Shown: one piece after another, positions 32,101 through 64,000 of the stretch
Layout of the letters: the number at the start of each line of letters is the position of its first letter
Position numbering within the stretch: position 1 is the first letter of the stretch
Position numbers and translations under genes: made by a program
The notes under the pieces: generated by a model
The model's input: only the letters and a program-made list of their open reading frames with translations
Database searches by the model: none
What the model was told of the DNA's origin: nothing
Assembly: GCA_047495785.1 (NCBI GenBank)
Contig: JBLDXI010000009.1
Location: forward strand, 3,286,001 to 3,350,000
DNA: 64,000 bases
Direction of reading: 5' to 3'
From: Lepidodermella squamata
Lineage: Eukaryota > Animalia > Gastrotricha

Positions 32101-32647
32101 CAGTTTTCAACATTGAATAATCAGTTCCATCGTAAAAGAAAGCCGAGTTTTGAGTGTCGCTGATAACAGTTTTGCAGTAGACGTATCCGCTGCCTTCGCC
32201 AGGCTTCAAACGACCCATGTAAGGATCAAGGACATTTTTGCCCAAATTTGTGTAGCCAGAAGCGTTTTGCTTGTAGTAATTTGTTCCATTAAGCCAGTAG
32301 GTTGTTGTGCCGATAGAAAATTTCAGGTAGCCATAGCAGGTAACATCCGGCACTTCTTGGCTGGCAAATGGCACGAAACTCGTCCCGTTGCAAAAGTTCA
32401 ATTGCGGTGTTGAGGTTGGCGTCCAGCAAAACAGCGTTGTACCGACGTAGTAGGAGTATGTATTAGTAGGGCAAGCAACACCGTTGCATTTATTATCATA
32501 GACAAATGCTACAGTAGCTGCAGCTGTAGTCTCATCCTGTCCAGAAACGTAGCCGTTCAGCGCGAAGACGCATAATAGACACACCTTTGATAAGAAGTTT
32601 TGAAAAATTAGCATTAGAAAATGAAAAAAACTTACAAATTTTCGCAT
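29171..32647 (-). CDS. R4: paralogue with one aromatic-rich repeat and a Met/Asn/Gln/Pro-rich tail
   Basis: Spliced signal MRKF|VCLLCVFALNGYVSG; EGF/TSP1 30300-30647; RKKR; TM AGVLAAVMAGVAVGITFYCL. Confidence 0.88.
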
Positions 32648-41007: not shown

Positions 41008-41393
41008 AGTAGGCGATGATGAAAATCAGTTTATCAGTACATCAGTGATTTTGAAATCTGCATTATCCATCTGTGATCATGATTAATAAATCACGCGTAT
41101 ATCTGATTATGCGAAGTTGATTTTCTGATCCCTGGAGCTTACAGTGCGGCTAAGTGCGACGTTCCACCCTCGGTGTGAAAATGTTTCGCTGTAATGAAAT
41201 GGGTTTGCTTTAATTTTTTTCTGGAGTGTTTCCAATGTTTGACGCGTTGGAACAATCGAAACATTTGCTCCATGGTAACTCTAGTCATGTCGGTAAATAT
41301 TATCAAACACAGCTTTAATTTCTAATTATTCAAGCCAGTTCGAATCGGGTGGTTTTATTCGATAACGAACGACATAATACATAATAAAGTAGT

Positions 41394-42566: not shown

Positions 42567-42916
42567 CGCGATAGGTCAATTTTCCAAAAATTGTTGCAAA
42601 AATGAGGGTCTTTTGTCTATTATTATATGAAAAAATCTGCGAACTCCACAATTAATAATTGATGATAATGGGTGCTGTTTCATTCAATTAAAATGGCTGC
42701 GTTGGAATATTCTGACGTTCTTGATCCTACGCTAACACCTGGAAACGTCTGTTTCAATCGATTAATTGGATTGAATTGCGTGGTTACATGACGAATTTAC
42801 TGAAAAACTGGAGTAGTTCACTACATAATTATGTATTCGAAAAATCATTAAATCATACAAAACAACATAAAAGTTTAACAGTTATCAGCTTTCAGCCAGT
42901 CTGTTGTGTCAATTAT

Positions 42917-45804: not shown

Positions 45805-46070
45805 GATTGGGTAAATGAAAAGATTGAACCTGATATTCCTTACAAATTTTCGAAACAAACTGATTCAAAGAGACATGCGAAGAATCAACAGTGTAAAAAC
45901 ATCCATTAAGCTGAGTGCTGAAAACTCTTGGGACTGAAAACACATTTGGTTCCTGGTAGTGTTTTATTGAAACACCAATCAAACAAATCATCCATTAAAA
46001 AATTAAATTTTAACTACTACTCGTATCGAAGCACAGCGTTGAATGTTTTTTTCTGGGCGTGGAGCTTGGC

Positions 46071-48783
46071 TCAGAAGTGCGGCGCATCTGCCGCACCGTA
46101 CCCATAATTCATGTGTTGGTTATAAGGGTCGTTATTAGTATGATTGTAGATCCCGCTATCCAGTGAACCAGGATATGGGCTGTCGTTTGCATGTAAAGAA
46201 AAGTAAGCTGCATACGCGGCCTCTTCCTCAGCCGTCATAGCAGCTGTTCCAGGTTGATGAATCGGCTCGGGCGGGTAATGAGGAATATTTGCATGATTTG
46301 CGTGACTCGCGTGATTCGCGTGAACTATAGGTTGATTGGTCATTTCGTACTGGTTATTGAACAACTGGTTAACCGGGACAACTGATGCTCTCCTTTGTAC
46401 AGTTTCATGCATACGAACTTCGCTGATAGGTGTTGGGGCTACTTGAGGCTTAACTTTAGGAGAAGGTTTCCTTGCCTCTTTTTTAGCGGCTGCTTTCTTG
46501 CCCTGCTTTTTGCACAGATAGACGCCGATTCCGATTGCTAAGCCTGTTATAAGAAGCGGTAAAATAATCCCAACCGCTAACAGCCAGCCTTGAATGCATG
46601 AATCGCCGAGTGTCACCCAGGAAGATGGGCATCCTGTTTGAGACCCACCTGCAGAACTTTCGGAACCCGAGCTTGCAGTGGTATCGGCGTGCGTAACTGA
46701 TGCTGATGTAGTAGCCGTGGTGGTAGTTGTTGCAAGTCCAAAAGAGCTCGAAGAAACCGAAGCTGCGGGATCAGCTTGCTGAACGGCTGAAGTTATCGAT
46801 GAAACACTAAGGAAAACACGTGTTTTGCGTCATAATTCAGCAAAATACAGCAAACTTACACTGAATTTGACTGAACTATGGTCAGCAATGATGATTGATC
46901 GATCGCTACATAGGATGCGGCTCGCTTTTTCCTAGCCTTCGTCGTTGAGTTGCTATCACTGGCGGATGCACAAAGGGCATTGGTAGTGTTAGCTTTCGGG
47001 AGAAGTCCGACACAGAATTTTGAGCCGTCTTTGTAAGGATTGAGAAGCTGAACTTCAGAGGAATAAATAAATGTCCCAGACACGCTTGATGACCACGATT
47101 TCCCGGGGCAACATAATGCGAAGGTGCTGTTCTCAGTACGGCATTTCGTATTCAGAGCATTGGCAATACAAGATTTCATCGGGGTTGAAACAACCTTGTT
47201 GAAAAGTGATACTGTAAGAACTTGCGAGGTGAAGCACAAGTCAACGGCGTATTTTGTTGTTTCAGCATCATCTTAAAAACGGGGGGTCGTAAAATCAATG
47301 CGTTATTGATTTGGAGGGCTCTTACATGGACATCTCCCTTTATCGCAGTCTTGAACTACGACTTTTGCAGAATCTTGGCATGGCCCACCAACAGGATCAC
47401 ATATCTGAGTTACTTGCTGTGTTCCATAACCACCTTTTAAAGGACAATTATTCAGCTTTCATCTCTCAAAAAAATGAACATTTACATGTAACGCTGCAAG
47501 TTCCGAGGCTTGAAGTTTTCCAGGCTATAGCGTAATCAATGCAAAGTTTGATAACTTGCCAATCAAATGTGTCCTTACCGTAACAATCTTTGCCATTCGT
47601 TTGAAGCTGGTAGCCAGCTGGGCATGTGCAAATCGGCATTCCGGCAACGACATTACAGGTAGCCAGGTATCCGCAGGTGCAATTAACTTTGCTGCTAGAC
47701 GAGGAACTTGGGAATTTTATAGCTGGACACAAAAATGATGTCAAGGCTGAGTAAAATCTTTCAGTATGTTACTTTGACAAGTCGCATCGACATCTGTTTT
47801 ACTCCAATATTCGGGGCATTTCATTGAAATTGTTGTTGAGTCACATATTGAAGAAGGTGGGTCGTAGTAGAAGTCCAAACTGCTCTGGCCTACGGAAGCT
47901 ACCTTTGTAGATAAAGCTGGGCATAAAATCGAGGGTAATTTCTATTTAGGTTCAAGCGGAAAAAGCACTTACGAATGCATACTTCATCGTACAAAATGCC
48001 GATTGGATTGCTGGTTTCATCAAACTGCCAAGCTATGACGTATTTCGAGCAAGAGGCGCATGCACAAGAGCCTGATTTGCAATAACCCGTGTAGCAATCA
48101 GAGTCATAGGTACAGTTTTGACCATATCCTAGGGAGAACAAATTCAGGGAAAAATTTTGGGAATTTTGAGGGAGATTACTTTGAGAATTTGTCGAAGTTG
48201 AGTTAGTCGCATTAACAGGGAGGCAAACTCCCATAGTGCATGTCATGGCACTTGCTAAAACTGAGCCATATGCGACAGAAACTGAAGCGCAATATTCCCC
48301 CGAATTGCCACATGAATTATTAGCACCAAGAGTACAAGGCCGAACGCCACTTGCTGTAAAACCTCGATATTTAACAAAATGTCTCTGAATTAGAGTCGCC
48401 TACTCAAATTTGCTGAACTCCAGTATGGGCTTGATGAAGCGTTGCACCGTGCTCGATAGTCATCGGGATCAGGTGCTATAAAGTTCGACGATGTCATAGC
48501 ATATTCGGATAACTCCCTGGTTAGAAGTTCTTACCTGTAGTAGTGACCACTGCAGTCGTTGTTGTTAGAGCAACAGTAGTGTTATCTAAAAAATGTAACA
48601 AAATTGCGGCTGCTTTTGATAAAAGGCTTCAACCAAACCTGATGTAGTAGCGTTTGTCGGATTCTGGCAACATCCTGCATATCTGGTTTACGCAATAGAA
48701 TATCAAAAAAGAAGCAACTAACCGATTTCGATAAGCAATAGTAGCCCGAAGGCTGTGACGAATTCTCTTGTCAAATTACCCAT
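46071..48783 (-). CDS. R10: paralogue with short N-terminus and Tyr-rich tail
   Basis: MGNLTREFVTAFGLLLLIEI; Cys modules; EGF CTCPAGYQLQTNGKDCY; RKKR; TM WLLAVGIILPLLITGLAIGIGVYLC. Confidence 0.85.
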
Positions 48784-49299
48784 ATCGAACGGGCCATAAT
48801 TTTTCGAGTGTATCCGTGTGTGTTTAATTCTCCGCATTGTGTTCTAATTGAGAACACAATTTCTGGTGTGTGCGCTTATGCCGATCGAACATCGATCGCA
48901 GCCGACACAATTGTAATCTTCTTGAAAGTGCAATGGATTTATCAATCATTCATAATGCTGTTTCCCCTAAATTATTCGCGCCATCAAGTCTGTAGCATCG
49001 GTTGCGTGGTTCGACCCCATCAAACTGTTTAAAGTAACCAAAACATTAATCATTCTCGCCGCGCCCTATCCAATTTTCGCCAATTTGTTCTAACACCTAG
49101 CGATCGACGTCAAACTATTTATACACAGCGCAATGTACTTCAAGTAATATTATTCTCACAGCTGGCTTGCTACCTAGTGAACTGGCAAAATTCAACCATT
49201 GCGTCATCGCTTGACTAGGAAAAAAGCACATCACAACGTTTATTTCAAGCTTTCGAAGCATAATAACACAGATAGAAAATAGTTGTAGCTATGGAAAAG

Positions 49300-52200
49300 T
49301 TAGAATCTGTTTCCTTCGGCGTAATAGGCCACGGCTGGGTTGTATGCCACGTCTCTTTGGTAGTACAAGTTATCCCTTCCTACACTTTGAGGAGGCTGGG
49401 GAGCCGGCGCATTCGGCGTTTCGAATAAGTTGGCGTAGTAAGCATCAGCGTACGCTTGTTTCTCCTCTTCAGTCGGCCGATGGTTCTCAAACTGCGGTGA
49501 CAGCTCTCGAGTTGCGAACATACCTGTCGGAGCCACTGTCGCTGAGTATGGCTGGTGAGGCTCCATTCTCGGCGGAAGGTCCAAAGGCACAATGCTCAAA
49601 GGTTGGTAGCTCGGTTGGTGCATGCTCATTTCGGGAGTAGCCTGTGCAACCGCCCCAGGTTGTATTTTTCGTTGGCTGTTCTGCTTAACGCAACACGCGA
49701 CGATCACGCCGACAAGTATAGCTATGAGCAGAACCCCTACGCCAACAGCAACACCCAGGACCCATATCTTCACCCATTTGTTTCCGATTTTAACCCAGGA
49801 GGAATCGTAAGCTTCAACTATGGCTGAAGAATTGGATTGCAGAGTGGTAGATACTGTGGTTGACGTTGTTGAAGTCGTAGTTGTAGCCAAAGACACTGAA
49901 GTCGTGGAAATCGAAGCTGACGGGTCAACTAAAGCGATGGCTGAGTTGATTGATGAAAGCCTAAAAAACGCCTTTAAGCTATAAGACTCAATAAATTGAA
50001 CGTTTTACATGTCCGCAGATTGGGTTAGACTCAAAAGCGTTGTTTGATCAATCGTCGTATAAGTGTCACGCTTTTTCCGCGCCGTTGACGTAGCAGCCTT
50101 ACTGCAAAGATCATTGGATGAGTTGGCCTTAAGCATGAGTCCAAGGCAAAAGGTGATCCCGTCCGTATCAGGGTTCAATAGAGCGACCTCAGACGAGTAA
50201 ATGTAGATTCCCGTGAGATTAGAGGACCTGAAATCAAAATTTAATGGGACGGAACCAAGGTATAATTAGAACTTACCATGTCTTTCCTGGGCAGCATGAT
50301 TTGAAGGTTGACGAATCATTTTTGCACTTTGAATTCATTGTAGTTGATACCCCAGATTTCATCTGATATGCGACCAGTTTGTTGAATAGCGAGACCGTAA
50401 GTATACTCGAGTTGAAACAGAGGTCAACGGCGTACTTAACAGCTTCCGAATCAACTAATAGTAATTAATCGATTAAATATTTCTGTAAATTATGTTAACA
50501 CCCACATGGGCACCTAGCCAGTTGGCAATCTTCAACAGTCCGCCGGGTTTCATTCGAACAAGGGGAGTTAAGGGATGTTGGTGCGTCACACTGTTGAGTT
50601 ATAGATCGAGTTCCCAGACCACAAGTGACGCTACATGACCCCGTAGCAGTCGTATTCCAGCCTATCAAAAAAACCGTTAATGTAGCTGGATAGACCTTAA
50701 AGGACCAACCATAGCAGTCCTTTCCGTTTGCATGAAGTAGATAGCCGGAAGGACATGTGCATATATTCAAGCCTCCAACAACTGCACAGGAAGCAAGATA
50801 TCCACAAGAGCTGCAGTTCGAGCTTGATGACGAAGAGGTTGTGGAAAATTTGATTGCTGCAAGGGAAAGTTTAAATTTGCTCTCATTTCAAGTCAACTTA
50901 AGATTACACTGGCATGTCGCATCGATCGATGTGCTGTTCCAGTATTCTGGGCATTTCATTGGTAGCGATTTAGAGTCACAGCCTGTTACTGGAGGGTCGT
51001 AATGAAACGAATCCGATGTTTGCCCAGAGGATGCGAGCGTGGTATTTTTTGCTTAAATGAAAGCCAATAATGCCAGCTCAAGAATCAGTTTCATACTTAC
51101 GAATACAGCTCTCCGAATAAGATAATTCAAATGCATACGAAGAAGTATTGAAAACGTATTTCCAGGCTATCGAGAATTGAGCGCAGGAAGCGCAAGTGCA
51201 AACCGAGTTACAGTAACCGGTATAGCAATCTTCATCTTTGCTGCAATTTGCGCCGAATCCTTAAGGAAAATTAAAACATTGAGCCTGCATATCCACAGTG
51301 CGATGAAAAGATTTACTCAGCAGGGTTTTTGTCGAAGCCGAAGAAATGTTTTTAGCTGTCAAATTGGGAAAATTATTAAAAAAACAGATCGCAAATAGGT
51401 CCTTACTTTGAACACAAATTCCCATTTTGCAACTGAGAGCTTTGGATAAAATCGAGCTGAAAGCAGTTGACATCCCTACGCAAGTTTCGGTTGAACTGCT
51501 ACAGGAGTTGTTAGCAGACAAAGTGCAAGGACGATAGCCAGAAGCTGACGAGGGAGCACTCATAAAATACATTGCATTTCAGTAAAATTGCGAAACCAAC
51601 TTCTATTGACTGATGTGAAGGTCGGTGTTTTCGTTGCGACACATTTCGATAGATAGCGCTCAGTGGTAGATGTCTTCGACGTGGTAGTTGCAGACGTGGC
51701 GGATGACTGACCAGAACTTGCAGCTAGCGTTGTAGCTGTCGTAGTAGTCGTGGTGGTCGTTGTAGACGAAGATGATGCCGAGGATCCCGTTGAAGACTGC
51801 GAGGCCGTGGTCTGGCCCGATGAAGAAGCGGCCGACGTTGCAGGTGTTGACGATGTCCCGCTGTAGAAAAACAACGACGCTGTAGAAAAATATTGCCAGA
51901 TGAAAATTAAGCTACGATTGAGCTTTGAATGGCGATTTTCAAAGAAATTAAAATTTATATTAAAACCTGTTGAGAGACCGTTGCGTCACAAGCTGAGTAG
52001 TTGTTGAAGCTGTGGTGGTTCCAGTGCTTCCGGTGGAGCTTCCGGCGCTTCCAGTGGTTCCAGTTGTTCCAGTGGAGCTTCCGGTAGGTGAAGCTGTAGA
52101 AGCGATTGGTGAAGTTGAGATGGCTGAACTCGACGAAGTGGCAGTCTGAGTTACAGCTGAAGATGTCACAACCGACGAACTTGGAGGTGAAGTTGAGGCC

Positions 52201-53714
52201 AGAAAGGTTGTCACTGGAGAAGCTGCAGCGGATGACGTCGTTGCAGATCCTGTCGTCATTAGGGAAGTCGTCACAATCGTAGTCGTTGGTGAGCTAGAAC
52301 CTGGTTGGGTCGTAACTGACGACGTCGAGGCTGGAAGGGATGTAGTCCCAGTTGAAGAAGGCGCAGTACCAGGAAGCGTTGTAGTAGGCGATGATGTGGC
52401 TGAAGCCGTGGGTGTCGCAGTAGTAGCGGCTAGTGAAGTCGTCGCTACAGTTGCAGAAGAAGTAGTGACTAGTAAGGTTGTAGCCGCGGTTGTAGGGGAA
52501 GTTGTCCCAGGGGACGAACTTGCAGCCGCAGTAGTTGTAGGTAACGTCGTAACTGACGTAGCTGACATGGTTGTTGCTACTGTTGCTGACAAAGTCGTCA
52601 CTGCGAGGCTAGTGGTCACAGCTGAAGTGCCTGTACTTGGTAGCGTTGTAGCTGTTGTAGTTGGAGATGTAACTGTTGAGCTTGTTGTCACAGTCGAAGG
52701 CAAGGTCGTCACAATAGTCGCGCCAGGGGTTGTGGTAGTATCAGTCGCAGATGTTGTAGTCAAAGGTAACGTCGCAATCACAGTTGTGGGCGATGTTGAA
52801 GCTGGTATGGTTGTCGTCACTGTTACTGGTGAACTCGTAGCAAGTGCGGTGGTAGTCGCAGGCGCATTCGAAGTAGTAGTCGGACTCGTCGCTGCTGTTG
52901 CTGCTTGACTTGTAGTAGGTTGGGTAGTGACTACAGTTGTAGCAACTATAGTAGTAGCTACAGTTGTTGGAGAAGGCGTGTCAGCAGCTAAGGCGGTAGT
53001 TGAAGTAGTTGGTGGTGATGTGGGGGATGTAGCTGTGGTTGTAGTTGAAGTAGTTGCTGGTGATGTGGGGGATGTAGCTGGGGTTGTAGTTGAAGTAGTT
53101 GCTGGTGACGTGGGGGATGTAGCTGGGGTTGTAGTTGAAGTTGTTGCTGGTGACGTGGGGGATGTAGCTGGGGTTGTAGTTGAAGTAGTTGCTGGTGATG
53201 TGGGGGATGTACCTGGGGTTGTAGTTGAAGTAGTTGCTGGTGATGTGGGGGATGTACCTGGGGTTGTAGTTGAAGTTGTTGCTGGTGACGTGGGGGATGT
53301 AGCTGGGGTTGTAGTTGAAGTAGTTGCTGGTGATGTGGGGGATGTAGATGGTGAGGTTGTAGGCGGTACAGTTGTCGTCACTGTTACTGGAGAAGTCGTG
53401 GCAGGCGTTGTTGTAGTTCCAGGCGCATTCGACGTAGTGGTCGGAGAACTGGTCGCTACTGCTGTTGTTGGACTTGTTGTAGGGATAGTAGGGACAGTAA
53501 CAGATGTGGTAGTCGTAGCAAGAGTTGTAGTCGTTGTAGGTGGCGCAGTCGTCGTTGTAGTTACCTTTGTAGTGGTCGAAGTAGTTGCTGGTGGTGGCGG
53601 CGGCTGTCCTGTAAATAAAGAAAGAGATCAAAAGCTTAACAAGTGCTTGTTGTAACAACCTCGAATAGAGCAGATTATGAATACCAATGCAATAGCGAGA
53701 TTTAGGGCGGTCAT
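49300..53714 (-). CDS. R11: transmembrane mucin paralogue with a 15-aa tandem repeat
   Basis: MTALNLAIALVFIICSIR|GQPPPPPATT; long T/S/P domain; EGF/TSP1 50495-50770; RKKR; WVKIGNKWVKIWVLGVAVGVGVLLIAILVGVIVACC. Confidence 0.85.
52998..53347 (-). repeat. Coding 45-bp tandem repeat (about 7-8 copies, TTSTTTP[A/G]TSPTSPA) in R11
   Basis: The unit GCTGGTGAYGTGGGGGATGTASCTGGGGTTGTAGTTGAAGTWGTT repeats with few changes. Confidence 0.9.
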
Positions 53715-54048
53715 TTCTAGCCGAACCTAGCTCTTCGCAAAAAAGTTGAAAAGAAATGATTTGCGCGTTTGCTGCAAATCGTTTATGTTGCACCTTGGCA
53801 GCCATTTCTCATTAGTGGATGTTGACTAAACAGTGGAAACTGGAAACTGTTAAGTTCCTTTTAATTATCTGATGTGAATTATTCATAACTTTCACCTCAA
53901 AAGCAAAACGCCGAGGCAATTAGCGTCAGTTTATTTACCGCATATCAGAGCGCAATCAACTGAAAGTAAGAGTTCATCTTGTCAACTTGTCTTGTCGCTT
54001 CGTTAATTTGGGCATTGATCGCAATACTTTCGAGAGCATCTTTCGAAA

Positions 54049-56980
54049 TCATGTATCATACGCCGCATAACCATGGTACGGATTGGTCGTCGTCGGGTTG
54101 GCGCCTTGATAGCCTGCTGCATTTTGCGGTGGGTAGTACAAGTCGCTTCTTACATTCCCGTTTTGATGACTGAATGAGTCATACTGCCCGTGGTCGTGGG
54201 CGCCCTGCATAGATGCATAGTATGCCATGGCAGCTGCATCCTCGTCATAAGGTGGATCTTGATGCTGGTTAGGATAGTGCTGTTCGCTGGAGGGGTTACC
54301 ATATCCAGTGATCATTTCAGGCGATACCCTTCGATGCCCTGCAGCGCTAAACCTCGGAGAATCCTGGGGCTTTTTGTCTTTTTTCTTACAGCAGCAAATC
54401 GCAACAACGATGCCGATAATGAGTAACACTAATCCACCTGCAGCACCGCCTATGATTCCGAGATGAAGACACATAGAGCCGATCAAGATGAAGCCTGAAT
54501 CACAGCTTAGGGTTGTCGCTTCACTCTTACTACTGGCTGCTGTAGTTCCGCCAGCGCCACTGCCTGAAGTCGTGGTAGTAGTCGTTGTCGTTGTTGTAGT
54601 CGTGGTTGTTGCCTGGCTGAAAGATGACGCTGATACACTAGCGGCTGGATCCGCCTGTTGAACGGCTGAAGTTATTGCAGCGACGCTATACAGACGAACC
54701 GCAGATCTACGAAGATAGAATTTTGTCACCGAAACTCACATGTCGGATAATGAAGCGATTTGCAACATCGTTGATTGATCGAAGGTTATGAAACTTGCAT
54801 CACGCTTCCTTCTCCGCTTCTAAAGAAGCAATGTTACCATTTCATGAATACTTTCATTCACAAATTTACCCCTTCGGGAGGAGCGGTGGTAGGCTGAGGG
54901 GTCGTAGTTGGAGCAGCAGTTGGGGCGGCAGTTGTTGCTGTCACTGCAGCAGTAGTTGGGGCATCAGTTATTGTCGTTACTCCCGCAGTAGTAGGGGCGC
55001 CAGTTATTGTCGTCACAATTGTCGTAGTCGACGCAGTAGTTGCAGGAGCCGCTGTTGTCGTCGTAACCACCGCTGCGGTTGTCGTGGCTACCGTTGTAGC
55101 TGTAGCTGTCGTGGTTTTTGTCGTAGTTACTGATGATGTAGTGGTCGCTGCTGTAGTTGTGATAGATGCCGCTCCAGCGCATAAGGAATTGCTAGCATTA
55201 GCTTTCAGCATTATCCCTACGCAGAACTTGCTGCCATTAGTATCCGGATTCAGAAGCACAACCTCGCTAGCTTGCATGTAAGTCCCACTAAGCGTGGCAC
55301 TCCATTCTTTGTTAGGACAGCATGATGAGAACAGAGTTTTATCACTCTTGCATTTCGAGTTCATCGCAGTGGCAATTTTCGTCTGCATCGACGCAGCGAC
55401 TACTTTCTGAAACAGCTCTACAGTGAGCACGGTAGAGTCGAAGCACAGATCAACGGCGCTTTTCGCAGCATCAGCATCAACTTTTAACACGCGATGAATC
55501 ATCAAGATTTTAGTTGTTCGAATGTCTGGAAACTTACAAGGACATCTGCCCATGTAACATGATTCCGAGGTTGTTTTTAAGGAGTCGAGGCATGGGGACG
55601 ATAATGTCGATGGAGCATCGCAAGTTTGAGTTACAGTTCGTGTTCCATATCCACCTTAAAATTCTCAACATTATCCTTTCAAGACTTCGGTCTATACACT
55701 TACATGTTACATTGCAAGAGCCTGTTGTAGTTGTTTTCCAGCCTTGAATGGTGAAGTGAATGAAAGCCAATAAGGATCAAGATTAGTCAACTTACCATAA
55801 CAGTCTTTCAGGTTACTGTGAAGGGCGTACCCTGACGGGCAAGTGCAAATAGGAACTTTATTGATAGAAACGCATGTTGCCGCGTTGCCACAGCTGCACC
55901 CGGTGGTGTTTGCCAAAGTAAAAGCTAAATAATACGGATGGTGAACACTTTTTGATATGACTTCCGATCAAAGACTTACGCTGGCAAGTCGCCGTGATAT
56001 CAGCATTGTCCCAATACTCGGGACATTTCAAGGAAGTAGTCACCGTGTCGCACAAACTCGAGGGTGGGTCGTAGTGGAAGTCTGCGGAAGCTTGTCCAGA
56101 ACCAGGTCTCTTCGACGTTTTCGCTGAAATCCTTTATTTGAAGCCTTCTTAATGCACGGAGGGTTGATATAGCTTACGAATACACATTTCATCATAGGCT
56201 AAAGCCAAAGGGGTAACGGTCTCGTCCACGTAGACATAAGACGCGAATTGCGAACAAGACGAACAGGCGCAGGTACCGCCAGAGCAATACCCAGTCATGC
56301 AGTCATCTTCCGACTTGCATGGTCTTCCGTATCCTAAAGAGAGAACGTTTATGAAGGCACTTTTGAATTGAGTCCTACTTCTTGGTGCAGCTTCAAGAGC
56401 TGCAGTTACTGTCGTAGCCGCGGCTGTCGTAGTTACTGCAGCGGCTGTAGTAGTTGCCGCAGCTGTTGTTGTAGTAGCTGATGATGTAGTCGAAGCCGTG
56501 GTTGTGACAACTATTTGAAATCATTATTTCACCTTCAAGGAATTTGCTGGTCAATTTACAAACCAGGTAAGCAGACTCCCATTTTACACGGAGACGGTAG
56601 GTTGGTTAGGATGGATCCGTATGCGGTAGATATCGGGGCACAATACTCACCACTACTGCACGTGCCATTGTTCGTTAAGTTGCAAGGTCTAACCCCAGAA
56701 TCTACGATACAAGCCGTTAATTCCTTCGCTGAAAGTAAGGTGATGCAATGACTGACCCTTATTTTTGTACGGATAGACAGGTGTGTCCGATACGTTGCAT
56801 CTTGTGGTATCTAGCGGGGTCGTAGTAGTCAGTGCAGCCGTTGTGGTTGGCTCTGCAGTCTGACAATCTGACAGTTCAACTTTAAACGAAACAATCATCC
56901 AAAGCTCCGCAAATCATACCGATGAAGCTAGACTGGAACCCCAACAAAACGCAAAGCGTAAGCCAGTAGATAGATATCAT
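54049..56980 (-). CDS. R12: paralogue with a Thr-rich insert inside the SEA-like loop and a Tyr-rich tail
   Basis: MISIYWLTLCVLLGFQSSFI; Cys modules; EGF/TSP1; KRRRKR; TM IIGGAAGGLVLLIIGIVVAICCC. Confidence 0.85.
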
Positions 56981-57410
56981 ACTATCGACGATAATTCCTC
57001 TTTTTCAGCAGAAACCGGAGGCGTCGTAAGTTAGTGTCACATTCGTTAAATATTCAATTTCTTCACTTCATTAAAAATGCAATACAGGAATGAAAAGTTT
57101 GTTTTGTAAATACTCTAAGCGCGCGAGAACAAAGGATAAGATAGTTACCTAGGTACGATCGCTTAATTTTTTGATCGAGTCATATTCGTCAGGCTAAGAA
57201 ATTGTCTTTATAGCGGTTATTTTCCGAAGTGCGTGCTCGACATGAGCCGCGTAAATCATTAATTTTAAATGCTGCTCCTTTCAAGGATCAATACCTATCT
57301 TGTGGCTAAGAAACGCTCATACTCAATGAACCCTGGTCAAAACACAACATTTTCTAATCGAATAGCCATTTTTATTGCCAGGTAGTTGGAAATAGTTGGG
57401 AAACTCAGTA

Positions 57411-58249
57411 TCAAGCTATACACGTGCAATCATCGATTAACAAGTTTGGAATTTCGATGGAAAAAGTTGTTCCATTATTCTGATTTGAAGCAAAGCTAAG
57501 CGATATCGATTGATTGTTTTGGTCTGTTTGAACCGGAACGCAACTGGACTCGAGGCTGCTGCTTATAACAGCTAGGTCCTGCAGGATTGAAGATCTGGCA
57601 TTCGCGACAATGTCGTGCCAATAGGGGTCTGAGGGCCGGCATAATCCGGCGCAGTAGGGCAGAACGATATTATGGCTAATCGGCGACAATTCAACGGAGG
57701 GTGGTAGCAGGGTTTGGTTTTCAAGCATTTTTCTTAGGTTGAGATGCGTGAATCTAAGTCGACAAAACGACTTTTGAGAGTCCGCAGTCGTAGTAGTTTG
57801 CTGGGCATTTTCACTTCTCCTTCGCCTGAATGGAAAAGAAAAAAAGAAATTAAAGAATAATTCAAAATTAAATATTTCTAAAATCAAATCAAATAAAAAT
57901 AATATTCAAAACTAACCCTTAACCCTAACCCTAATCCTAATCCTAACCAGGAAACCCCATAAATTCGAGAAAAGGTTAGGTTCAATTTTAAAAATTATGT
58001 TCAATAGGCATTTCAAATTATTGTATTGAAAAATTAAAAAATTATAAAAAATTATAAAAATTATAAAAAGTACAAGGAAGAATACCTGGCAAAGCTGTGC
58101 TGTAAAATTATCAGATGGTCATTTATAAGCTTTTCCACAATATTGCCGACTTGAAACTTATCAGCCTCACTGATTTCGGAACAGGCGATACATTTGAACA
58201 GAATTAAAGCAAAGAAAGCTGGCAAAAGTAGTACCAATTTCAGCTGCAT
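57411..58249 (-). CDS. T1: divergent TGF-beta-like cystine-knot protein (signal, ~30-aa pro-piece, RRRR, 6-Cys knot); exons 58249-58086, 57825-57411
   Basis: MQLKLVLLLPAFFALILFKCIAC...HSFA R|RRR SE; then FCRL, YCAGLC, SCVP, NLLIDDCTC, which is TGF-beta family spacing without the interchain Cys. Confidence 0.8.
57912..57948. repeat. Short degenerate (TAACCC)n / TTAGGG-like tract in the T1 intron
   Basis: ctaacccttaaccctaaccctaatcctaatcctaacc. Confidence 0.6.
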
Positions 58250-58912
58250 TTTTTAGCTTACAACCTCAGGTATGTGAGTATATATCGCTATGAGGATGCT
58301 GGCGCGATTAGGTTGTTTCGGAGCGAACTTGCACCTGAATTGCACCGCAACCTGGGTTCCAGCCAGTAATACTGTGAAGAAACTAAAGAAACTATAAAGA
58401 AATTTATCCCAGTTTCACTAGCCATTTTGTATTATTCATTTTTCCACCTCAGACTGCCTATAATTAGCCTCGTTAGTTTTGTGGTCGAGTTTAGATCTTA
58501 TCGATCACGCAGGTATAAAAAAATGTGCGCCCTTTCACCAATTAATTGCTTATTGATATTATTGCGTAGCCAGAAAATGCGTGTGCGAGCTTGCAAAAAA
58601 GGCTCACAAATGGGTTTATAATTAATTTCGCGCAATATTCAAAAAAAAACTAAGTGCGCGAGCTTGAGGTGCATAATTAGCCAGCTTAAATTTTAGCGAG
58701 CCCGCTTGAAGCTGGAAACAACAAAATTTCAATTCAATTTCGGAATTTTGAATCAAATTTCGGTAAAAATAAATAACATTTTGGGTTTAATTATATAAGT
58801 CTGTATTTTTACGATGCACTTCTCCTCACTTCAGTTTATTCTTTTTGAAATAATTATATTTCAAATTTTCATAAAAAGTTCAAGTTGACCCTTCAATCCC
58901 TCGAGCTGTTTC

Positions 58913-59520
58913 TCAAGCAGAGCAGCCGCAAAGAGTTGCACTAATATTTTCCAAATCGAAAGTCCGTGATTTACCGAGGCCATCTTCATAAAATAGCGTC
59001 ACTGTTCGCCTCGGACCTATGGGGATGCATTGCATCTGGAATTTCGACTTCGGACCGAAGTACATGTTAGGCCATGATGCCGAGCCGGGTACAGCTAGCA
59101 ATTTCCAGTTCGGGTCATCGAAGCTGCAAAGGCCTCCACAGTACGCCACCTGGAATCGGAGCGTGTGCGCTGTTTCGCGAGACATTCCCGGGATTTCGTA
59201 GTTCAATTGTTCTGGGTAAATGGCTTCTCGTCGCAGGCAGCAGCCTGTTTCGTTAGCTGGGCCGATATCAGGCTCGCAGTCACCCACGCCGTAGCCGGCA
59301 GGAATCTTGGCGCCCCTATAAAAAAATAATGATCGATGGGCTTCGAGTTAAAATATAGCGTAGGTTTCCAAAGTCGTGTTTCAGAAATAAGGATGGAATT
59401 CTGTCCTTCTCACCGAATTCCGAATTGCGCTTACCATGGAAACATAGATCCCTCTAATTTTGAGATTAATATAAGCTTGAGGAATAAGGCGAGGAAATAG
59501 CGGGGAAATGAAGATTCCAT
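58913..59520 (-). CDS. T2: prodomain-less TGF-beta-like cystine-knot protein (2 exons)
   Basis: MESSFPRYFLALFLKLILISKLEGSMFPW|GAKIPAGYGVGDC...GCCLRRE...YCGGLC...QCIP...VTLFY...ATLCGCSA. Confidence 0.85.
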
Positions 59521-59619
59521 TTTTCACTCAGATCCGGAATAAATATATTTATAACCGTTGAATAATAGGAAAAATGTAGCTCTATTAACTGATTCATATC
59601 AATTCAGGTCGAGTTATAA

Positions 59620-59637
59620 ATGAAAAACAGATGTCTG
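59620..59637. promoter_or_regulatory. Conserved upstream motif ATGA(A/G)AA(A/C)CAGATGT containing an E-box; copies at 59620, 60702 and 61952
   Basis: The same 15-mer lies 85-110 bp upstream of the ATG of T2, T3 and T4, while the surrounding sequence is not obviously conserved. Confidence 0.55.
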
Positions 59638-60039
59638 TGAGTAACGAAAATTACGGCTGGAGCTATAACAAAATGTGCAAAAATTCGATTGGATGACCGG
59701 CTTCAGGTTAGGTACTCAAAACAGGGTCGCGAGACATTGGAAATCTGGTCAAATAATCCTATTAAGGAAATCAGAACGTGTTTCCGATTTGATTGGGTTG
59801 TAGTAGGTTCGATTCAGAATATTCACAAATCAGCTATCCACATTTTCGAGCCTAACCTTCAAACTCATGATGCCGTCGTTTGTATGTAAAGGAGCGTCCA
59901 ACGTTCATTGTTAATTTTTCAATGCCACGTTTTAAATTGCCAGAAAATCGTATAATATAAAAGAAAAATTCATAAAAATTTGCTGGATAATCATGAATAA
60001 CCTTTTATTTCTTTTAAATTTGTTGCGCGATTTTTGTTA

Positions 60040-60592
60040 TCAAGCCGAGCAGCCACAAGCAGTTGCCATGAGCTTCTCGAAAAGAAAAGGCCGCGGTTCG
60101 CCGTTGACGTAGTAAACCATGACCCTATTTCGCCGCGGTCCAATGGGCACGCAGCGCATCTTGTACGCCGACTGTTTGCCGAAAAACATGTTAGGCCACG
60201 CTGATGATGCAGAGCCCGGTACGATTAGCGATGGCCAGTTAGGGTCGTCGAAGCTGCACTGCCCAGCGCAATACGTAGCTATTAATCGATAATTATCCGC
60301 CTCGGCTCGCGTCATCCCGGGCACTTCATAGTTCAGCTGTGAAACGGTGACCCACTCCCTGCGCAGGCAGCAGTATGTTTCGTTTGCTGGGCCTGTTCCT
60401 TCTCGGCAGTCAGTCATGCCCCAGCCGGCTGGTATGCTACCACCCCTGCAAAAGTAATTATTGCGATTTCATAACAGTCATGTCGCGAATTTGTATTTTT
60501 TACCAGGGATATGTGTAGCCGAGTAATGGCGTAATTAGTGCAAAATCAATCCATAGAGCGAGAAAGATGATGTTCATCTCAGAGCGTCCCAT
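60040..60592 (-). CDS. T3: prodomain-less TGF-beta-like cystine-knot protein (2 exons), close paralogue of T2
   Basis: MGRSEMNIIFLALWIDFALITPLLGYTYPW|GGSIPAGWGMTDC...YCCLRRE...YCAGQC...RCVP...ATACGCSA. Confidence 0.85.
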
Positions 60593-60858
60593 TTTATAAT
60601 AATTTATTCGGGCTATAAAATATAATTATCGTTTCAAGCGCGGTAAAAATGCGTGTGAGGTATATTCATTTAATCAGATTGCTATCTATTTGTTGGCAGA
60701 AATGAAAAACAGATGTATTGTAAGGAATAATTATCTGTGATGGAATCTAAAAAAACTCAACTCAAGAAATAATATTGGCCACCCTAAATTTAAGGTTTCA
60801 GCGCTAAGATTTTTCCAAAACATGGCAAATCGAGCTTTACCTTTTCCGTGTGTTCTAA

Positions 60859-61005
60859 AAAGGAAAGGAAAGGAAAGGAAAGGAAAGGAAAGGAAAGGAA
60901 AGGAAAGGAAAGGAAAGGAAAGGAAAGGAAAGGAAAGGAAAGGAAAGGAAAGGAAAGGAAAGGAAAGGAAAGGAAAGGAAAGGAAAGGAAAGGAAAGGAA
61001 AGGAA
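60859..61005. repeat. (AAAGG)~29 pentanucleotide microsatellite
   Basis: Uninterrupted array, direct reading. Confidence 0.98.
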
Positions 61006-61321
61006 CCTCAATTTTATAGCTTGCAAATATTTACTTCAAACCACCTTCAACAGCGATTACAGCAAAATCGACTGGGATATCCAGAATCTGCTCCCAGAAT
61101 TGCCAATAGTTAAGCTGTTTCTGATTGTCAAATCTGAACAAAACCCTTTTTTTACCAATCTTTGTGATTTTTTCTACTTGCTTTTTTTGTTGTTGTGAAA
61201 TAGGTTAGAGGAATGAAATTTCAATCGATGTTTCTTCTATTTCTGACATTCTTGGAAATTTATTTGACATTTGACAGCTTCCAAATTTTCCAAAAAAGTA
61301 AGAACTCTCTTTTCTTTCTTA

Positions 61322-61867
61322 TCACACAGCACAGCCGCAAAGTGTTGCGTGGAAACCGGCGAGATGTTTAGTTTTAAGATACCCATTTTCTGTATAGACC
61401 ACAAGCTGATCACCCCGCCGGCCAACTGAACGGCATGTAGGCAGCGAATACAGGAAGTGTTGGTGCGAAATATGCTCAGTGATATTCGGCTGGATCACCT
61501 TTTCATATTGGTAGTCAGTTGTTCGGCACAGCCCAGCACAATGGTAGATGAAAACTGGATCGCCTCGAGGTACCAGGATGTCTTCGGGCTTCAAATCGAG
61601 CTTTTTCGCAAATTCAGCCTTGGATATTTCTAGTTTTCGCACGCAACAGAAGGAATAATTCGGGTCGGGATTCGTCCTAGGGGCGCATAGTCCTACACCC
61701 CAACCCAGCGGAGCCTCTGTCGCTGGCACAATTCTGATAAAAATAATTCAAATAAAAAGAGTTATAAAAAATGTAAAATCCTTATACCCGAATTGTCCTT
61801 GGGAAATTACACAGATAAAGGTTTGAACAGCTATCAGAAAAGTTGCGGAGATTGAGTGTTGAACCAT
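61322..61867 (-). CDS. T4: prodomain-less TGF-beta-like cystine-knot protein (2 exons)
   Basis: MVQHSISATFLIAVQTFICVISQGQFG|IVPATEAPLGWGVGLC...FCCVRKL...HCAGLC...TCRS...ATLCGCAV. Confidence 0.85.
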
Positions 61868-62118
61868 CGTTCAGCGGTAAAGTTAAGTTCATCCAATATT
61901 TAGATTTTGCCGAGCTATTTTTCCGCTTGAAGGCGAAATAATAGTCTCAAAATGAGAACCAGATGTCTGCATGAAAAATTTTCGGATTGTCGATTTTATT
62001 TATTAGCAGAAAAGTTGCGATAAAATCCGAGAAGTTTTTCATGTAATGACCTAATTTCTAAAAGTTTAATTGGCCCTCACTAATAAGGAGGTCTTTTTTG
62101 TCACAATAAATAATGATG

Positions 62119-62457
62119 CTAAACCGAGCAGCCGCAACGTGTCGCGTGGAATCCTGACACGATTTTCGTTTTAAAATAGCCATTTTCAAGGTAGACAACT
62201 GGCTGATCCTCTCTTCGTGCAATCGAAATACAGTGCGGCAGCAAATCATAAGCGTTAGAACTCGGAACTGGCATACCATGGACATACTTGGACGTAGCAT
62301 TAGGCGGTATCAGCGTCTCCCAATCTGGGTCAGAATCGCGGCACAGCCCAGCGCAGTGATGAATATAAATAGGATCGCCTCTTGGTATCAAGATATCACC
62401 GGCAATTAGCCCGAGAGCTTTTGCGAAATCCTTTCTTGAAATCGGAAGTTTTCTTAT
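62119..62457 (-). pseudogene. T5: 3' part of a T4-like TGF-beta-like gene, interrupted by a transposon insertion
   Basis: IRKLPISRKDFAKALGLIAGDILIPRGDP...HCAGLC...ATRCGCSV aligns with T4 (CC-VRKLEISKAEFAKKLDLKPEDILVPRGDP). Similarity stops abruptly where CC should be, at the start of the repeat-rich element end. Confidence 0.75.
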
Positions 62458-64000
62458 AGTGCGTTCACAAACTACTTCGGAGAGGCGTCCGAAGTTTTCG
62501 GCCTCCGAAGAATCGTAACAGGCCTCCGAAGTTGCGTAATCGCTGCCCGAAGTTTAGATTTTCGTTCACAAACGCGCGCACTTCGGCCGCGCTGCCCGAA
62601 GTTTGAACAATAGACCCTCCGAAGCGGCGCGCGCGCACTCATCAAAGCACTTCGGTTCGGAGAGCCTGAAAACTACCCTCCGAAGTGCGTCCGAACCGAA
62701 GTTTTAAAACAATAGAGTTGCTCGTCTGACAAGCAGTTACTTTATTGCCCAAGACTGCTGCAGTACAACAATTATTAGCTGAGTGAATGAACAGAGTAAA
62801 AAACGAACGAGAGATACCAATAACAGTCAATAACCGAGAAGTTTGCGGCGAACGACGTCATTAATGTCGAAGTATAAGTGCGTAATTTCATGATCAGACA
62901 AATTAGAACGCTCTAAGGCATTAAGAATAGAAGAAAACAGTTCATTTATGAAACGGCGGCGATCTGGCACGTCATCAGGCTCCAGCGACTGCAAAATGGC
63001 TCGCAGCGTCGGGTCTTCCTCGTTCTCACCGTTGTCACCGTTGCGCCGCTTCTTGGCCTTCTTGTAGCCGTTGGTAGCGACAGGTGTAGCGCTTTCGGCC
63101 GGCAATACGGCACTGGGCTGAGAAGCGGATGGCGGCAAAACATCTCCTTGAGAGTCATCGATCGGCTGTGCGGCGGCTTGATCGAAATGCGGCAGGTTGT
63201 CGTCGCCAGCGGTAGACGAGTCAACGCGATTGACGGCGGCAGTGGTGGCGGCGACGGCGGCGTTGCTTTGGCGGGAGACAGATGCCGGTGCGGAGTCGGC
63301 GGGCAGATTTCCCTTTGTTCTAGAAGAAAAACATGATTTTATTTATGAAACCAAAATTCATGATTTTTCAAACTTACTTGTTTTTGTACACGATGACGTC
63401 AGCAAGGAACGTCATGGCGTCGTAATATGGGAACCGGCTCTTCTTGTCAGCTGCAGCCGAGCCACTCGCGATGTAGGCCTTGTGGCATTTCGTAAATTTG
63501 TCCCGAAGCGAATCCCACATGTCGCGGGCTTCTTGGGCGGAGTACGGCTGCGGACCGGTTTGAACGGTGGCGGGTTTTAGTGGCAACCGTGTCGCCAGCG
63601 CGGCCCAATGGGTGTTTTTGAACACTACATCGCAGTACTTGGCGTCGGTGGGTCGCCAAAGGCACGGGTTGCACCGGACGTACTCGATGATGGCTGTGTC
63701 AACTTCGTTGCGGTGCTGATCGATTGAGATGCGGGATGACGACGACAACGACGACGACGAAGCTGGGCGAGTCGATTGCGACTGCGGTACCGGAGTGAGC
63801 GGCAGAGACGTTGAATGCCATGCTTGGGCTGGCTGCGAGTGAGGCGTCATGTTGTGGTATTGCGGCTGGCTGTCTTCAAAGCTGTTTTGGCTGGCTGGCG
63901 GGTAGTAGTAACGCATGTCGTTCATCATTTTCAGGCGAGTGAAATCGTAAAACTTCGAATAATTATAACGAGAACTGAAACCTTAGTGAGCAGAGCATTG
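62458..64000. mobile_element. PIF/Harbinger-like DNA transposon, left end (continues beyond the window)
   Basis: Terminus (A)GTGCGTTCACAAAC at 62457-62459 onward; about 10 subterminal CCGAAG/CTTCGG motifs in 62475-62701; internal MADF gene; sits inside the T5 coding sequence. The right TIR and transposase are not in the window. Confidence 0.7.
62827..63928 (-). CDS. MADF (Myb/SANT-like) DNA-binding protein with BESS-like C-terminus; exons 63928-63378, 63319-62827
   Basis: IIEYVRCNPCLWRPTDAKY...KNTHWAALA...WDSLRDKF...SGSAA...FPYYDAMTFL is the MADF pattern; in-frame splice to KTKGNL. Confidence 0.88.

What the first reader, a model, noticed from the sequence alone, without database searches (positions are those of the whole stretch)
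57411..62457. Cluster of at least five minimal TGF-beta-like ligands with no prodomain and no interchain cysteine
Seen: T2-T4 are a signal peptide followed directly by a ~130-aa domain with 8 Cys (C..CC..CxGxC..C..CGC). This is the 9-Cys TGF-beta/activin pattern with the dimer Cys replaced (Q, R, T; H in T5; S in T1). T1 keeps only a ~30-aa pro-piece, RRRR and the 6 knot Cys. Known: TGF-beta family ligands normally need a large furin-cleaved prodomain and form disulfide-linked dimers; Lefty, GDF3, GDF9 and BMP15 lack the dimer Cys but keep prodomains. Inference: a new class of monomeric or non-covalent mini-TGF-betas (antagonists, pheromone- or effector-like proteins, or ligands for non-canonical receptors), with T1 as an intermediate in prodomain loss.
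Basis: partly seen in the sequence, partly recalled or inferred. Interest (0 to 1): 0.85.

Follow-up and report, generated by a model that had tools for sequence, protein, structure and literature searches.

The report
Prodomain-less TGF-beta-like secreted protein gene cluster
An unidentified small invertebrate carries a row of small genes for secreted proteins that are very diverged TGF-beta-type growth factors, yet lack both the large prodomain and the dimer-forming cysteine that such factors normally have; this is unusual, but their expression and function are untested.

Summary
Window 57411-62457 (minus strand) carries four intact two-exon genes (T1-T4, 162-192 aa) and one 5'-truncated copy (T5). 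T2-T4 are a signal-peptide exon, a 54-119 nt intron, then a ~125-aa domain with 8 Cys spaced as in TGF-beta/activin; the interchain Cys is Q, R, T (H in T5, S in T1). T1 has a ~30-aa pro-piece, RRRR, and only the 6 knot Cys.

Assignment to the TGF-beta superfamily is supported. Pfam TGF_beta is the only meaningful hit, though below its cut-off. A family profile hits only TGF-beta-superfamily chains in the PDB (best E 9e-6). Two AlphaFold models give only superfamily chains as their top 50 Foldseek hits.

An exhaustive HMM search of 1.84 billion proteins found two relatives, both from another unidentified animal in metagenomes. They show the same two layouts: one intronless signal peptide plus domain, and one short pro-piece ending in RMKR. 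A hidden canonical prodomain is therefore unlikely, and T1 is a conserved form, not shown to be an intermediate.

The paralogues are old and under purifying selection. No RNA data exist, and function is inferred only. This is a new variant of a known kind. The scan's own notes report more copies past the window end and on another piece of this genome; I did not check these.

The parts
57411..57825 (-). T1 exon 2: RRRR furin-type site, then a diverged 6-Cys cystine-knot domain, then the stop codon
   Evidence: Gene model. Pfam TGF_beta E 6e-4 over profile positions 2-104. Best outside match is P0002, tblastn E 3e-14.
58086..58249 (-). T1 exon 1: start codon, signal peptide and ~30-aa pro-piece. 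A 260-nt intron follows.
58913..59315 (-). T2 exon 2: 8-Cys TGF-beta-like domain, with Q at the interchain-Cys position
59435..59520 (-). T2 exon 1: signal peptide. A 119-nt intron follows.
60040..60445 (-). T3 exon 2: 8-Cys TGF-beta-like domain, with R at the interchain-Cys position
   Evidence: AF2 model pLDDT 77. Foldseek top 50 hits are all TGF-beta superfamily.
60504..60592 (-). T3 exon 1: signal peptide. A 58-nt intron follows.
61322..61733 (-). T4 exon 2: 8-Cys TGF-beta-like domain, with T at the interchain-Cys position and a PRGD motif before CxGxC
   Evidence: AF2 model pLDDT 74.8. Foldseek top 50 hits are all TGF-beta family. A variant haplotype or copy has 9 synonymous and 6 non-synonymous changes and keeps every Cys.
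61788..61867 (-). T4 exon 1: signal peptide. A 54-nt intron follows.
62119..62457 (-). T5: 5'-truncated copy of the T4 type. It lacks the signal peptide and the first three Cys. The remaining 112 codons are open, with H at the interchain-Cys position.
62457..62750 (.). High-copy dispersed repeat rich in CCGAAG/CTTCGG units that abuts and truncates T5
   Evidence: Word depth about 1760-4480 here against about 60 on the T5 side and about 130 on the other side. Contigs break at 62454-62457. Internal short repeats are listed.
57371..57376 (-). AATAAA after the T1 stop. Matching minus-strand signals follow the other stops at 58835-58840, 60004-60009, 61259-61264 and 61995-62004.
   Evidence: One signal lies 31-115 nt downstream of each of the five stop codons.

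Best explanation
This is a tandem array of old, independently terminated paralogous genes. They encode small secreted proteins whose whole mature part is a highly diverged TGF-beta-superfamily growth-factor (cystine-knot) domain.

There are two conserved layouts. In T2, T3, T4 and the metagenomic relative P0001, the signal peptide joins directly to an 8-Cys domain. That domain keeps the four intrachain disulfide positions of the TGF-beta/activin type but lacks the interchain Cys. In T1 and the relative P0002, the signal peptide is followed by a 20-30 aa pro-piece, a furin-type site (RRRR or RMKR) and then the domain. T5 is a 5'-truncated, probably dead copy.

Shown here: the gene anatomy, the family relationship, conservation of both layouts in a second animal, and purifying selection.

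Inferred: the proteins fold and are secreted without a chaperoning or latency prodomain. They cannot form the disulfide-linked dimer, so they would act as monomers or non-covalent dimers. My preferred mechanism is a non-latent extracellular ligand or competitive modulator of TGF-beta-type receptors, by analogy with ligands that lack the dimer Cys and with engineered TGF-beta monomers. I give that functional step only about 0.25.
For: Gene models: in frame, with GT..AG introns of 54-260 nt and a Met plus hydrophobic N-terminus. Each gene has its own AATAAA.

Family assignment:
- Pfam at E<=10 finds only TGF_beta in all five copies, apart from one chance-level phage-family hit (E 0.23) in T4; scores are 15-22 bits.
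- Language-model neighbours of T3 are all TGF_beta clusters; the top score, 0.90, is borderline by the tool's own guidance.
- Exhaustive HMM search of 1.84e9 proteins: after the two family members, the next hit is a limpet TGF-beta precursor (E 3.8e-4), aligned over its C-terminal mature domain.
- The 7-sequence family profile against all PDB sequences: all 60 listed hits are TGF-beta superfamily. Activin A/BMP2 chimera 9e-6, activin A 3e-5, TGF-beta2 4e-5, GDNF 2e-4.
- AF2 models of T3 and T4 (pLDDT 77 and 75): the Foldseek top 50 are all superfamily chains.
- VIA-align top 9 are artemin, myostatin, GDNF, GDF15, mini-monomer TGF-beta2, pro-TGF-beta2 and AMH.

No prodomain:
- The introns are too short to hold one.
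- Gaps between neighbouring genes are 252-730 nt and hold no prodomain-like ORF.
- P0001 is one uninterrupted ORF of signal peptide plus domain, and the sequence upstream of it is not conserved as coding sequence across its contig variants.

Functionality:
- T2/T3 dN/dS is about 0.28. pN is below pS in all pairs, with dS saturated in most of them.
- The T4 variant has 9 synonymous and 6 non-synonymous changes and keeps all Cys.
- An N-glycosylation sequon lies just before the CC in T2, T3, T4 and P0002.
Against: - No transcript evidence at all. The only public run holding the locus appears to be DNA; its type is not on record. Starts, splicing and expression are therefore predictions.
- Pfam scores are below the curated cut-off (27 bits).
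- The structural Z-scores (about 6-7) are only slightly above those of other cystine-knot growth factors: VEGF 5.6, glycoprotein hormone 5.1, DAN 5.0.
- The wrist region is poorly modelled (pLDDT about 50).
- An engineered TGF-beta monomer secreted without a prodomain largely misfolds (bioRxiv 10.64898/2026.03.23.713733). Prodomain-free folding is therefore not a given.
- Nothing links these proteins to any receptor.
Confidence: 0.75

Rival explanations
1. The proteins are invertebrate counterparts of the GDNF-family branch of the superfamily. These are short-propeptide ligands that act through GFR-like co-receptors and RET or NCAM-type partners, not through TGF-beta receptor kinases.
For: - T1 and P0002 have the GDNF-like layout of a short pro-piece plus a furin site.
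- Artemin and GDNF are among the best structural matches: Z 7.3 and 6.6.
- GDNF chains reach E 2e-4 in the profile search.
- The domain lacks the Trp pair of TGF-beta finger 1 (from memory), as GDNF does.
- Invertebrates have GFR-like and RET genes but no known GDNF-family ligand (PMC3527400).
Against: - Activin and TGF-beta2 score about 10-fold better than GDNF in the profile search.
- T2-T4 carry the extra N-terminal Cys plus CC motif of the TGF-beta/activin type, which GDNF ligands lack.
- GDNF ligands keep the interchain Cys; these proteins do not.
- The Foldseek top ranks are TGF-beta and activin.
- I could not check whether this genome has GFR-like or RET genes.
Confidence: 0.12
2. The gene models are incomplete. 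A canonical prodomain is encoded by unrecognised upstream exons, and the apparent signal-peptide exons are wrong or are alternative first exons.
For: There is no RNA evidence. The genome is reported by other notes of this scan to use trans-splicing and operons, so 5' ends are hard to predict.
Against: - All four intact genes have their own Met plus hydrophobic exon 54-260 nt upstream, in frame.
- Each upstream neighbour ends with a stop and an AATAAA.
- The gaps are 252-730 nt and hold no prodomain-like ORF.
- The relative P0001 has its signal peptide and domain in one ORF.
Confidence: 0.06
3. The domain belongs to another cystine-knot family (DAN/CAN, glycoprotein hormone/bursicon, VEGF/PDGF, Noggin, IL-17, Trunk/PTTH), and the TGF-beta-like Cys pattern is convergent.
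For: VEGF, glycoprotein hormone alpha2/beta5, NBL1 and Norrin reach Z 5.0-5.6, close to the TGF-beta-superfamily values.
Against: - No such family appears in Pfam at E<=10, nor among the 60 PDB profile hits listed, nor in the Foldseek top 50 of either model.
- The C-terminal CxC two to three residues before the stop, the CxGxC motif and the CC-type N-terminus all match TGF-beta/activin.
Confidence: 0.04
4. The cluster is a set of decaying, non-functional gene copies.
For: T5 is 5'-truncated by a repeat. There are no expression data. The family is extremely diverged and rare in databases.
Against: - T1-T4 have intact ORFs although synonymous divergence is saturated between most pairs.
- dN/dS is about 0.28 for T2/T3.
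- All Cys are conserved.
- The same layouts are kept in another species.
Confidence: 0.03

Closest known systems
TGF-beta/activin/GDF8-11 type ligands (the 9-Cys mature domain, Pfam PF00019)
   Same: - Cystine-knot spacing.
- The extra N-terminal disulfide positions (one Cys plus a CC).
- The CxGxC motif.
- A CxC two to three residues before the C-terminus.
- A two-finger fold in the models.
- These ligands are the best sequence and Foldseek matches.
   Different: - No 150-300 aa prodomain (PF00688).
- No furin site in T2-T4.
- No interchain Cys.
- No Trp pair in finger 1.
- A poorly defined wrist helix.
- Pfam scores below the cut-off.
Ligands that lack the interchain Cys: GDF9, BMP15, Lefty, GDF3 (from memory) and C. 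elegans TIG-3 (Lys at that position, PMC11210861)
   Same: The dimer Cys is replaced, so any dimer must be non-covalent or a heterodimer.
   Different: All of these ligands keep a full furin-cleaved prodomain. The proteins here do not.
GDNF family ligands (GDNF, neurturin, artemin, persephin)
   Same: They are distant superfamily members with short propeptides and a furin site, as in T1 and P0002. They give good structural matches.
   Different: They have 7 Cys including the interchain one, and no CC-type extra disulfide. They are known only from vertebrates (PMC3527400) and signal through GFRalpha and RET.
Engineered mini-monomer TGF-beta (mmTGF-beta2-7M, PDB 5tx4/5tx6)
   Same: It is a TGF-beta domain without the interchain Cys (5tx4 lists C77S) that exists as a monomer. 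It gives the lowest-rmsd Foldseek match to the T4 model: 2.9 A over 107 columns. It acts as a specific TGF-beta inhibitor, which offers a functional analogy.
   Different: It is man-made and has the heel helix deleted, whereas the natural proteins keep a full-length segment there. It misfolds when secreted without a prodomain.

Membership tests
TGF-beta superfamily (growth-factor domain, PF00019) | Six knot cysteines in the order C...CxGxC...C...CxC, with the CxC at the extreme C-terminus | tested here: met
   All six are present in T1-T4. In the alignments they are invariant apart from the first, which the truncated T5 lacks.
TGF-beta superfamily (growth-factor domain, PF00019) | Sequence match to the curated Pfam model at its gathering score (27 bits) | tested here: not met
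   Scores are 15.1-21.9 bits, E 3e-4 to 0.04. TGF_beta is the only meaningful family hit.
TGF-beta superfamily (growth-factor domain, PF00019) | Significant profile similarity to known members and to no other knot family | tested here: met
   The family profile against the PDB: all 60 listed hits belong to the superfamily, best E 8.9e-6. The first non-family hit in 1.84e9 proteins is a limpet TGF-beta precursor, E 3.8e-4.
TGF-beta superfamily (growth-factor domain, PF00019) | Two-finger, wrist and knot fold | tested here: met
   AF2 models have pLDDT 77 and 75. The Foldseek top 50 are all superfamily chains with probability 1.00. The wrist has low confidence, and VIA Z-scores of 6-7.3 are only slightly above other knot families.
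Canonical TGF-beta family precursor | Large N-terminal prodomain (PF00688-type) ahead of a furin site | tested here: not met
   In T2-T4 the signal peptide joins the domain directly. T1 has only about 30 aa plus RRRR. P0001 is intronless and has no prodomain. This rests on predicted gene models.
Canonical TGF-beta family precursor | Interchain cysteine that forms the covalent dimer | tested here: not met
   The position holds Q, R, T, H and S in T2-T5 and T1, K in P0001 and R in P0002.
Canonical TGF-beta family precursor | Signals through type I/II Ser/Thr kinase receptors and Smads | not testable with these tools
Other notes of this scan report a type I receptor gene elsewhere in the genome; I did not check this.
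GDNF family ligands | Seven Cys including the interchain Cys, and no extra N-terminal disulfide | tested here: not met
   T2-T4 have the extra Cys plus CC and lack the interchain Cys. T1 has 6 Cys.
GDNF family ligands | Short furin-cleaved propeptide | tested here: inconclusive
   Present in T1 (RRRR) and P0002 (RMKR), absent in T2-T4 and P0001.
GDNF family ligands | Binds GFRalpha-type co-receptors | not testable with these tools
   Not assessed.

The most novel reading that the evidence does not exclude
These proteins are a natural class of TGF-beta-fold ligands that fold and are secreted without any prodomain and work as monomers or non-covalent dimers. They would act either as endogenous receptor antagonists or modulators, or as the long-sought invertebrate ligands of GFR-like/RET-type receptors. 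This would show that prodomain dependence and covalent dimerisation are not obligatory for this fold.
Probability: 0.2. Interest if true: 0.8.

Novelty: new variant of a known kind. Interest (0 to 1): 0.6.

Why it matters
From memory of the field's reviews, TGF-beta family ligands are described as made with a large prodomain that assists folding and dimerisation and often confers latency. An engineered TGF-beta monomer misfolds when secreted without one.

A natural, selected family with the signal peptide fused straight to the growth-factor domain and no interchain cysteine would be a counter-example worth expressing. It could show how the knot folds unaided. It could give templates for prodomain-independent monomeric binders or antagonists. 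It could also reveal a lineage-specific signalling or antagonist system. If instead the family is GDNF-like, it bears on the open question of invertebrate ligands for GFR-like and RET receptors (PMC3527400).

The family is almost invisible to standard annotation. It scores below the Pfam cut-off and has only two relatives among 1.84 billion representative proteins.

Tried and rejected
- Word-based homologue search with T3: nothing found.
- phmmer of T3 alone against the PDB: only a chance hit.
- The fourth hit of the exhaustive search (P0004, a 2246-aa repeat protein) is a low-complexity artefact matching 'C..LLC' and was discarded.
- The language-model search did not recognise T1.
- RNA evidence: no RNA run holds the locus.
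As the tool suggested, I laid only the part beside it, 61010-63000.
- Identifying the organism: the relative's SNF transporter has its best named hit in the orthonectid Intoshia at only 44% identity, followed by mixed bilaterians. Rfam found nothing in the window.
- Tree of the family: only the T4+T5+P0001 group has moderate support (85/84). The rest is unresolved and the outgroup branch is very long. No subfamily placement inside the superfamily is claimed.
- The idea that the neighbouring 15-56 kb region is a matching 'receptor array' found no support in what I tested. The seven largest ORFs there have no Pfam domain at E<=0.001, and one had no Atlas neighbour. From their translations they look like mucin-like single-pass proteins and Cys-rich proteins of unknown family.
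- A search for a T5 N-terminus upstream of the repeat found no homology.

Full report
**What is there.**
The minus strand of 57411-62457 holds five related ORFs. Reading the DNA and assembling exons gives four complete two-exon genes. Each has a first exon that starts with ATG and encodes a hydrophobic N-terminus. A GT..AG intron of 54-260 nt follows. The second exon ends in CxC plus two residues and then a stop.

- T1: 58249..58086 + 57825..57411, 192 aa.
- T2: 59520..59435 + 59315..58913, 162 aa.
- T3: 60592..60504 + 60445..60040, 164 aa.
- T4: 61867..61788 + 61733..61322, 163 aa.

Hydrophobicity of the N-termini fits signal peptides: the best 12-residue Kyte-Doolittle mean is 2.5-2.9. No signal-peptide predictor was available. 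A minus-strand AATAAA lies 31-115 nt after each of the five stop codons, so these are separate genes and not exons of one polyprotein. tblastn finds exactly five copies in the window. T2/T3 match at E 1e-43 and T4/T5 at 2.5e-35. Between subgroups the values are 1e-4 to 1e-11.

**The cysteine pattern.**
After the signal peptide, T2-T4 have 8 Cys: one N-terminal Cys, a CC, CxGxC, one Cys, and CxC. The spacing is close to that of TGF-beta2 (figures recalled from memory). In the HMM alignment to activin A, the family's single Cys in the '..xC(V/I)P' motif pairs with the second Cys of the ligand's CC. The residue in the interchain-Cys position is Q, R, T, H and S in T2, T3, T4, T5 and T1. T1 has RRRR at the exon junction after a ~30-aa pro-piece, and keeps only the six knot Cys.

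**T5 is not a whole gene.**
Its similarity to T4 stops at 62457. Upstream, the frame runs into unrelated sequence made of CTTCGG-type units. In the one public run that holds the locus, 62417-62750 has a word depth of about 1760-4480, against about 60 on the T5 side, and contigs break at 62454-62457. This is a high-copy dispersed repeat that truncated or replaced the 5' part of T5. The remaining 112 codons are still open, so the loss may be recent. Alternatively T5 may use an exon I cannot see.

**Which family.**
- Pfam at E<=10 reports only TGF_beta for all five copies, apart from one chance-level phage-family hit (E 0.23) in T4. Scores are 15-22 bits, below the 27-bit cut-off. No DAN, glycoprotein-hormone, PDGF, NGF, Noggin or IL-17 model appears.
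- A protein language model places T3 next to TGF_beta clusters only, with a top score of 0.90.
- A profile of the five copies was scored by HMMER against 1.84 billion representative proteins. It gave two family members (6e-21 and 9e-19), then a limpet (Patella) TGF-beta precursor aligned over its C-terminal mature domain (3.8e-4), then a repeat artefact.
- A seven-sequence profile scored against every PDB sequence gave 66 matches. All 60 listed are TGF-beta-superfamily ligands: activin A/BMP2 chimera 8.9e-6, activin A 3.2e-5, TGF-beta2 4.2e-5, GDNF 2.3e-4, then BMP6, AMH and others.
- AlphaFold models of T3 (pLDDT 77) and T4 (pLDDT 75) show the two-finger beta structure. For both models the top 50 Foldseek hits are exclusively superfamily chains.
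- An aligner independent of Foldseek ranks artemin (Z 7.3), myostatin, GDNF, GDF15, the engineered mini-monomer TGF-beta2, pro-TGF-beta2 and AMH first. VEGFs, glycoprotein hormone alpha2/beta5 and DAN proteins follow at Z 5.0-5.6.

Structure alone barely separates the knot families. The sequence profiles decide it. The domain is a very diverged member of the TGF-beta superfamily. The CC plus N-terminal Cys points toward the TGF-beta/activin type and away from the BMP or GDNF type.

**Is a prodomain hidden?**
- The introns (54-260 nt) cannot hold one.
- The gaps between one gene's stop and the next gene's ATG are 252, 730 (including a 147-nt microsatellite), 520 and 664 nt. They hold no prodomain-like ORF.
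- Independent support comes from the two relatives, which lie on metagenome contigs of another animal (neighbouring genes: 7TM receptor, SNF transporter, kinases).
- P0001 (148 aa) is a single uninterrupted ORF. Its signal peptide is followed within about six residues by the first Cys of an 8-Cys domain, with K at the interchain position. The longer ORF called on another contig (P0005) is not conserved as coding sequence; in L004 that upstream frame is interrupted by a stop.
- P0002, read with its upstream exon in L001, is 174 aa: signal peptide, about 22 aa, a 69-nt intron at the junction, RMKR, then the domain. This is the same layout as T1, which is also its best match.

Both layouts are therefore conserved between two species. 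This argues against mis-modelled genes. It also argues against reading T1 as a transitional form. The direction of change (loss or gain of the pro-piece) cannot be told.

**Age and constraint.**
Synonymous sites are saturated between most pairs. T2/T3 give dS 1.26 and dN/dS 0.28, and pN is below pS in every pair. A variant haplotype or copy of T4 in the public run differs at 15 exon positions, 9 synonymous and 6 mostly conservative, with all Cys kept. In a small tree, T4+T5 group with P0001 (85/84) and the rest is unresolved. So at least part of the diversification may predate the split of the two animals. An N-glycosylation sequon sits directly before the CC in T2, T3, T4 and P0002, as expected for secreted proteins.

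**How it probably works.**
Shown: small genes for signal-peptide-bearing, Cys-conserved, selectively constrained TGF-beta-fold proteins without a canonical prodomain and without the interchain Cys.

Inferred:
- They enter the secretory pathway. T1-type proteins are cut by a furin-type convertase.
- The domain folds without a prodomain chaperone and without prodomain latency.
- The product is a monomer or a non-covalent homo- or heterodimer.

By analogy with ligands that lack the dimer Cys (GDF9, BMP15 and Lefty from memory; C. elegans TIG-3, PMC11210861), I favour a role as non-latent ligands or competitive modulators of TGF-beta-type receptors. The engineered mini-monomer TGF-beta supports the same analogy. 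It is a specific TGF-beta inhibitor and is among the best structural matches to the T4 model. This functional step is weak, about 0.25. The engineered monomer misfolds when secreted without a prodomain. That is both a caveat and the reason a natural prodomain-free family would be informative.

A GDNF-like role through GFR-like/RET partners is the main alternative, about 0.12. T1 and P0002 have the short-propeptide layout, and invertebrates are reported to lack known GDNF ligands (PMC3527400).

**Context.**
- Upstream lies a MADF-domain gene (63928..63374, Pfam E 3.6e-13), and the ORF 63138..62827 just downstream of it may be its C-terminal part.
- The 15-56 kb region holds mucin-like single-pass proteins and large Cys-rich proteins with no Pfam match. 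I found nothing that makes it a receptor array for these ligands.
- Other first-stage notes of this scan say the array continues beyond the window end and that a similar gene sits on another piece of the genome. I could not read those places.
- The animal is unidentified. The relative's transporter has only about 44% identity to its best named hit, so the lineage is poorly sampled.

**Novelty and limits.**
Two full-text searches found no paper describing natural TGF-beta-family ligands without a prodomain. This library is incomplete. I rate the finding a new variant of a known kind: a lineage-restricted, prodomain-less, dimer-Cys-less branch of the TGF-beta superfamily.

The main weaknesses are:
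- no RNA evidence;
- Pfam scores below the cut-off;
- a shallow alignment of seven sequences behind the models;
- no functional data.

Noticed in passing
window 62417-62750: A high-copy dispersed repeat made of CCGAAG/CTTCGG-containing units, with a 13-nt inverted repeat at 62649-62702. Its word depth in the public run is about 30-70 times that of the flanks. It sits exactly at the break of T5.
   Followed up: partly
window 60859-61005: A perfect (GGAAA)n / (TTTCC)n microsatellite of about 147 nt lies between T4 and T3. It creates spurious ORFs on both strands and made read laying refuse the full stretch.
   Followed up: no
window 18474-32647, minus strand: Several long intron-poor ORFs (367, 570, 541 and 389 aa) encode Cys-rich secreted-looking proteins. 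They share repeated motifs such as 'WYLARLKP..G.G' and 'CCW'. None has a Pfam hit, and the one tested has no Atlas neighbour. This looks like an unnamed extracellular domain family in tandem. Related smaller ORFs lie at 21406-22395 and 26443-27234.
   Followed up: partly
window 38950-55553, minus strand: A run of Thr/Ser/Ala-rich mucin-like ORFs, several with one transmembrane segment and a Tyr/Pro-rich tail (for example 41394-42383, 49300-49896 and 54049-54729). No kinase or other known receptor domain was found in the one ORF of this run that I scanned.
   Followed up: partly
window 62827-63928, minus strand: A MADF-domain ORF at 63374-63928 (Pfam E 3.6e-13). A downstream ORF at 62827-63138 may be its C-terminal (BESS-like?) part. 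Together they sit immediately upstream of the cluster.
   Followed up: partly
window 57925-57965 (inside the T1 intron): A short run of TTAGG / TTAGGG-like telomere-type repeats lies inside the 260-nt intron of T1.
   Followed up: no
window 61550-61562 and 62365-62377 (T4 and T5): T4 and T5 both carry P-R-G-D just before the CxGxC motif; the relative P0001 has P-R-G-H. This could be an integrin-type RGD motif or chance.
   Followed up: no
window 61394-61719: The public run holds a second version of T4 exon 2 with 15 differences in about 330 nt. The intergenic DNA and T5 next to it differ far less (2 each). This may be a diverged allele or a close extra copy.
   Followed up: partly
L001 5788-7667 and L004 821-1642: The metagenomic relatives sit next to an SNF-family transporter and kinase genes (L001) and a 7TM receptor gene (L004). 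They are not in a tandem array, so the clustering seen in the window is not conserved there.
   Followed up: partly
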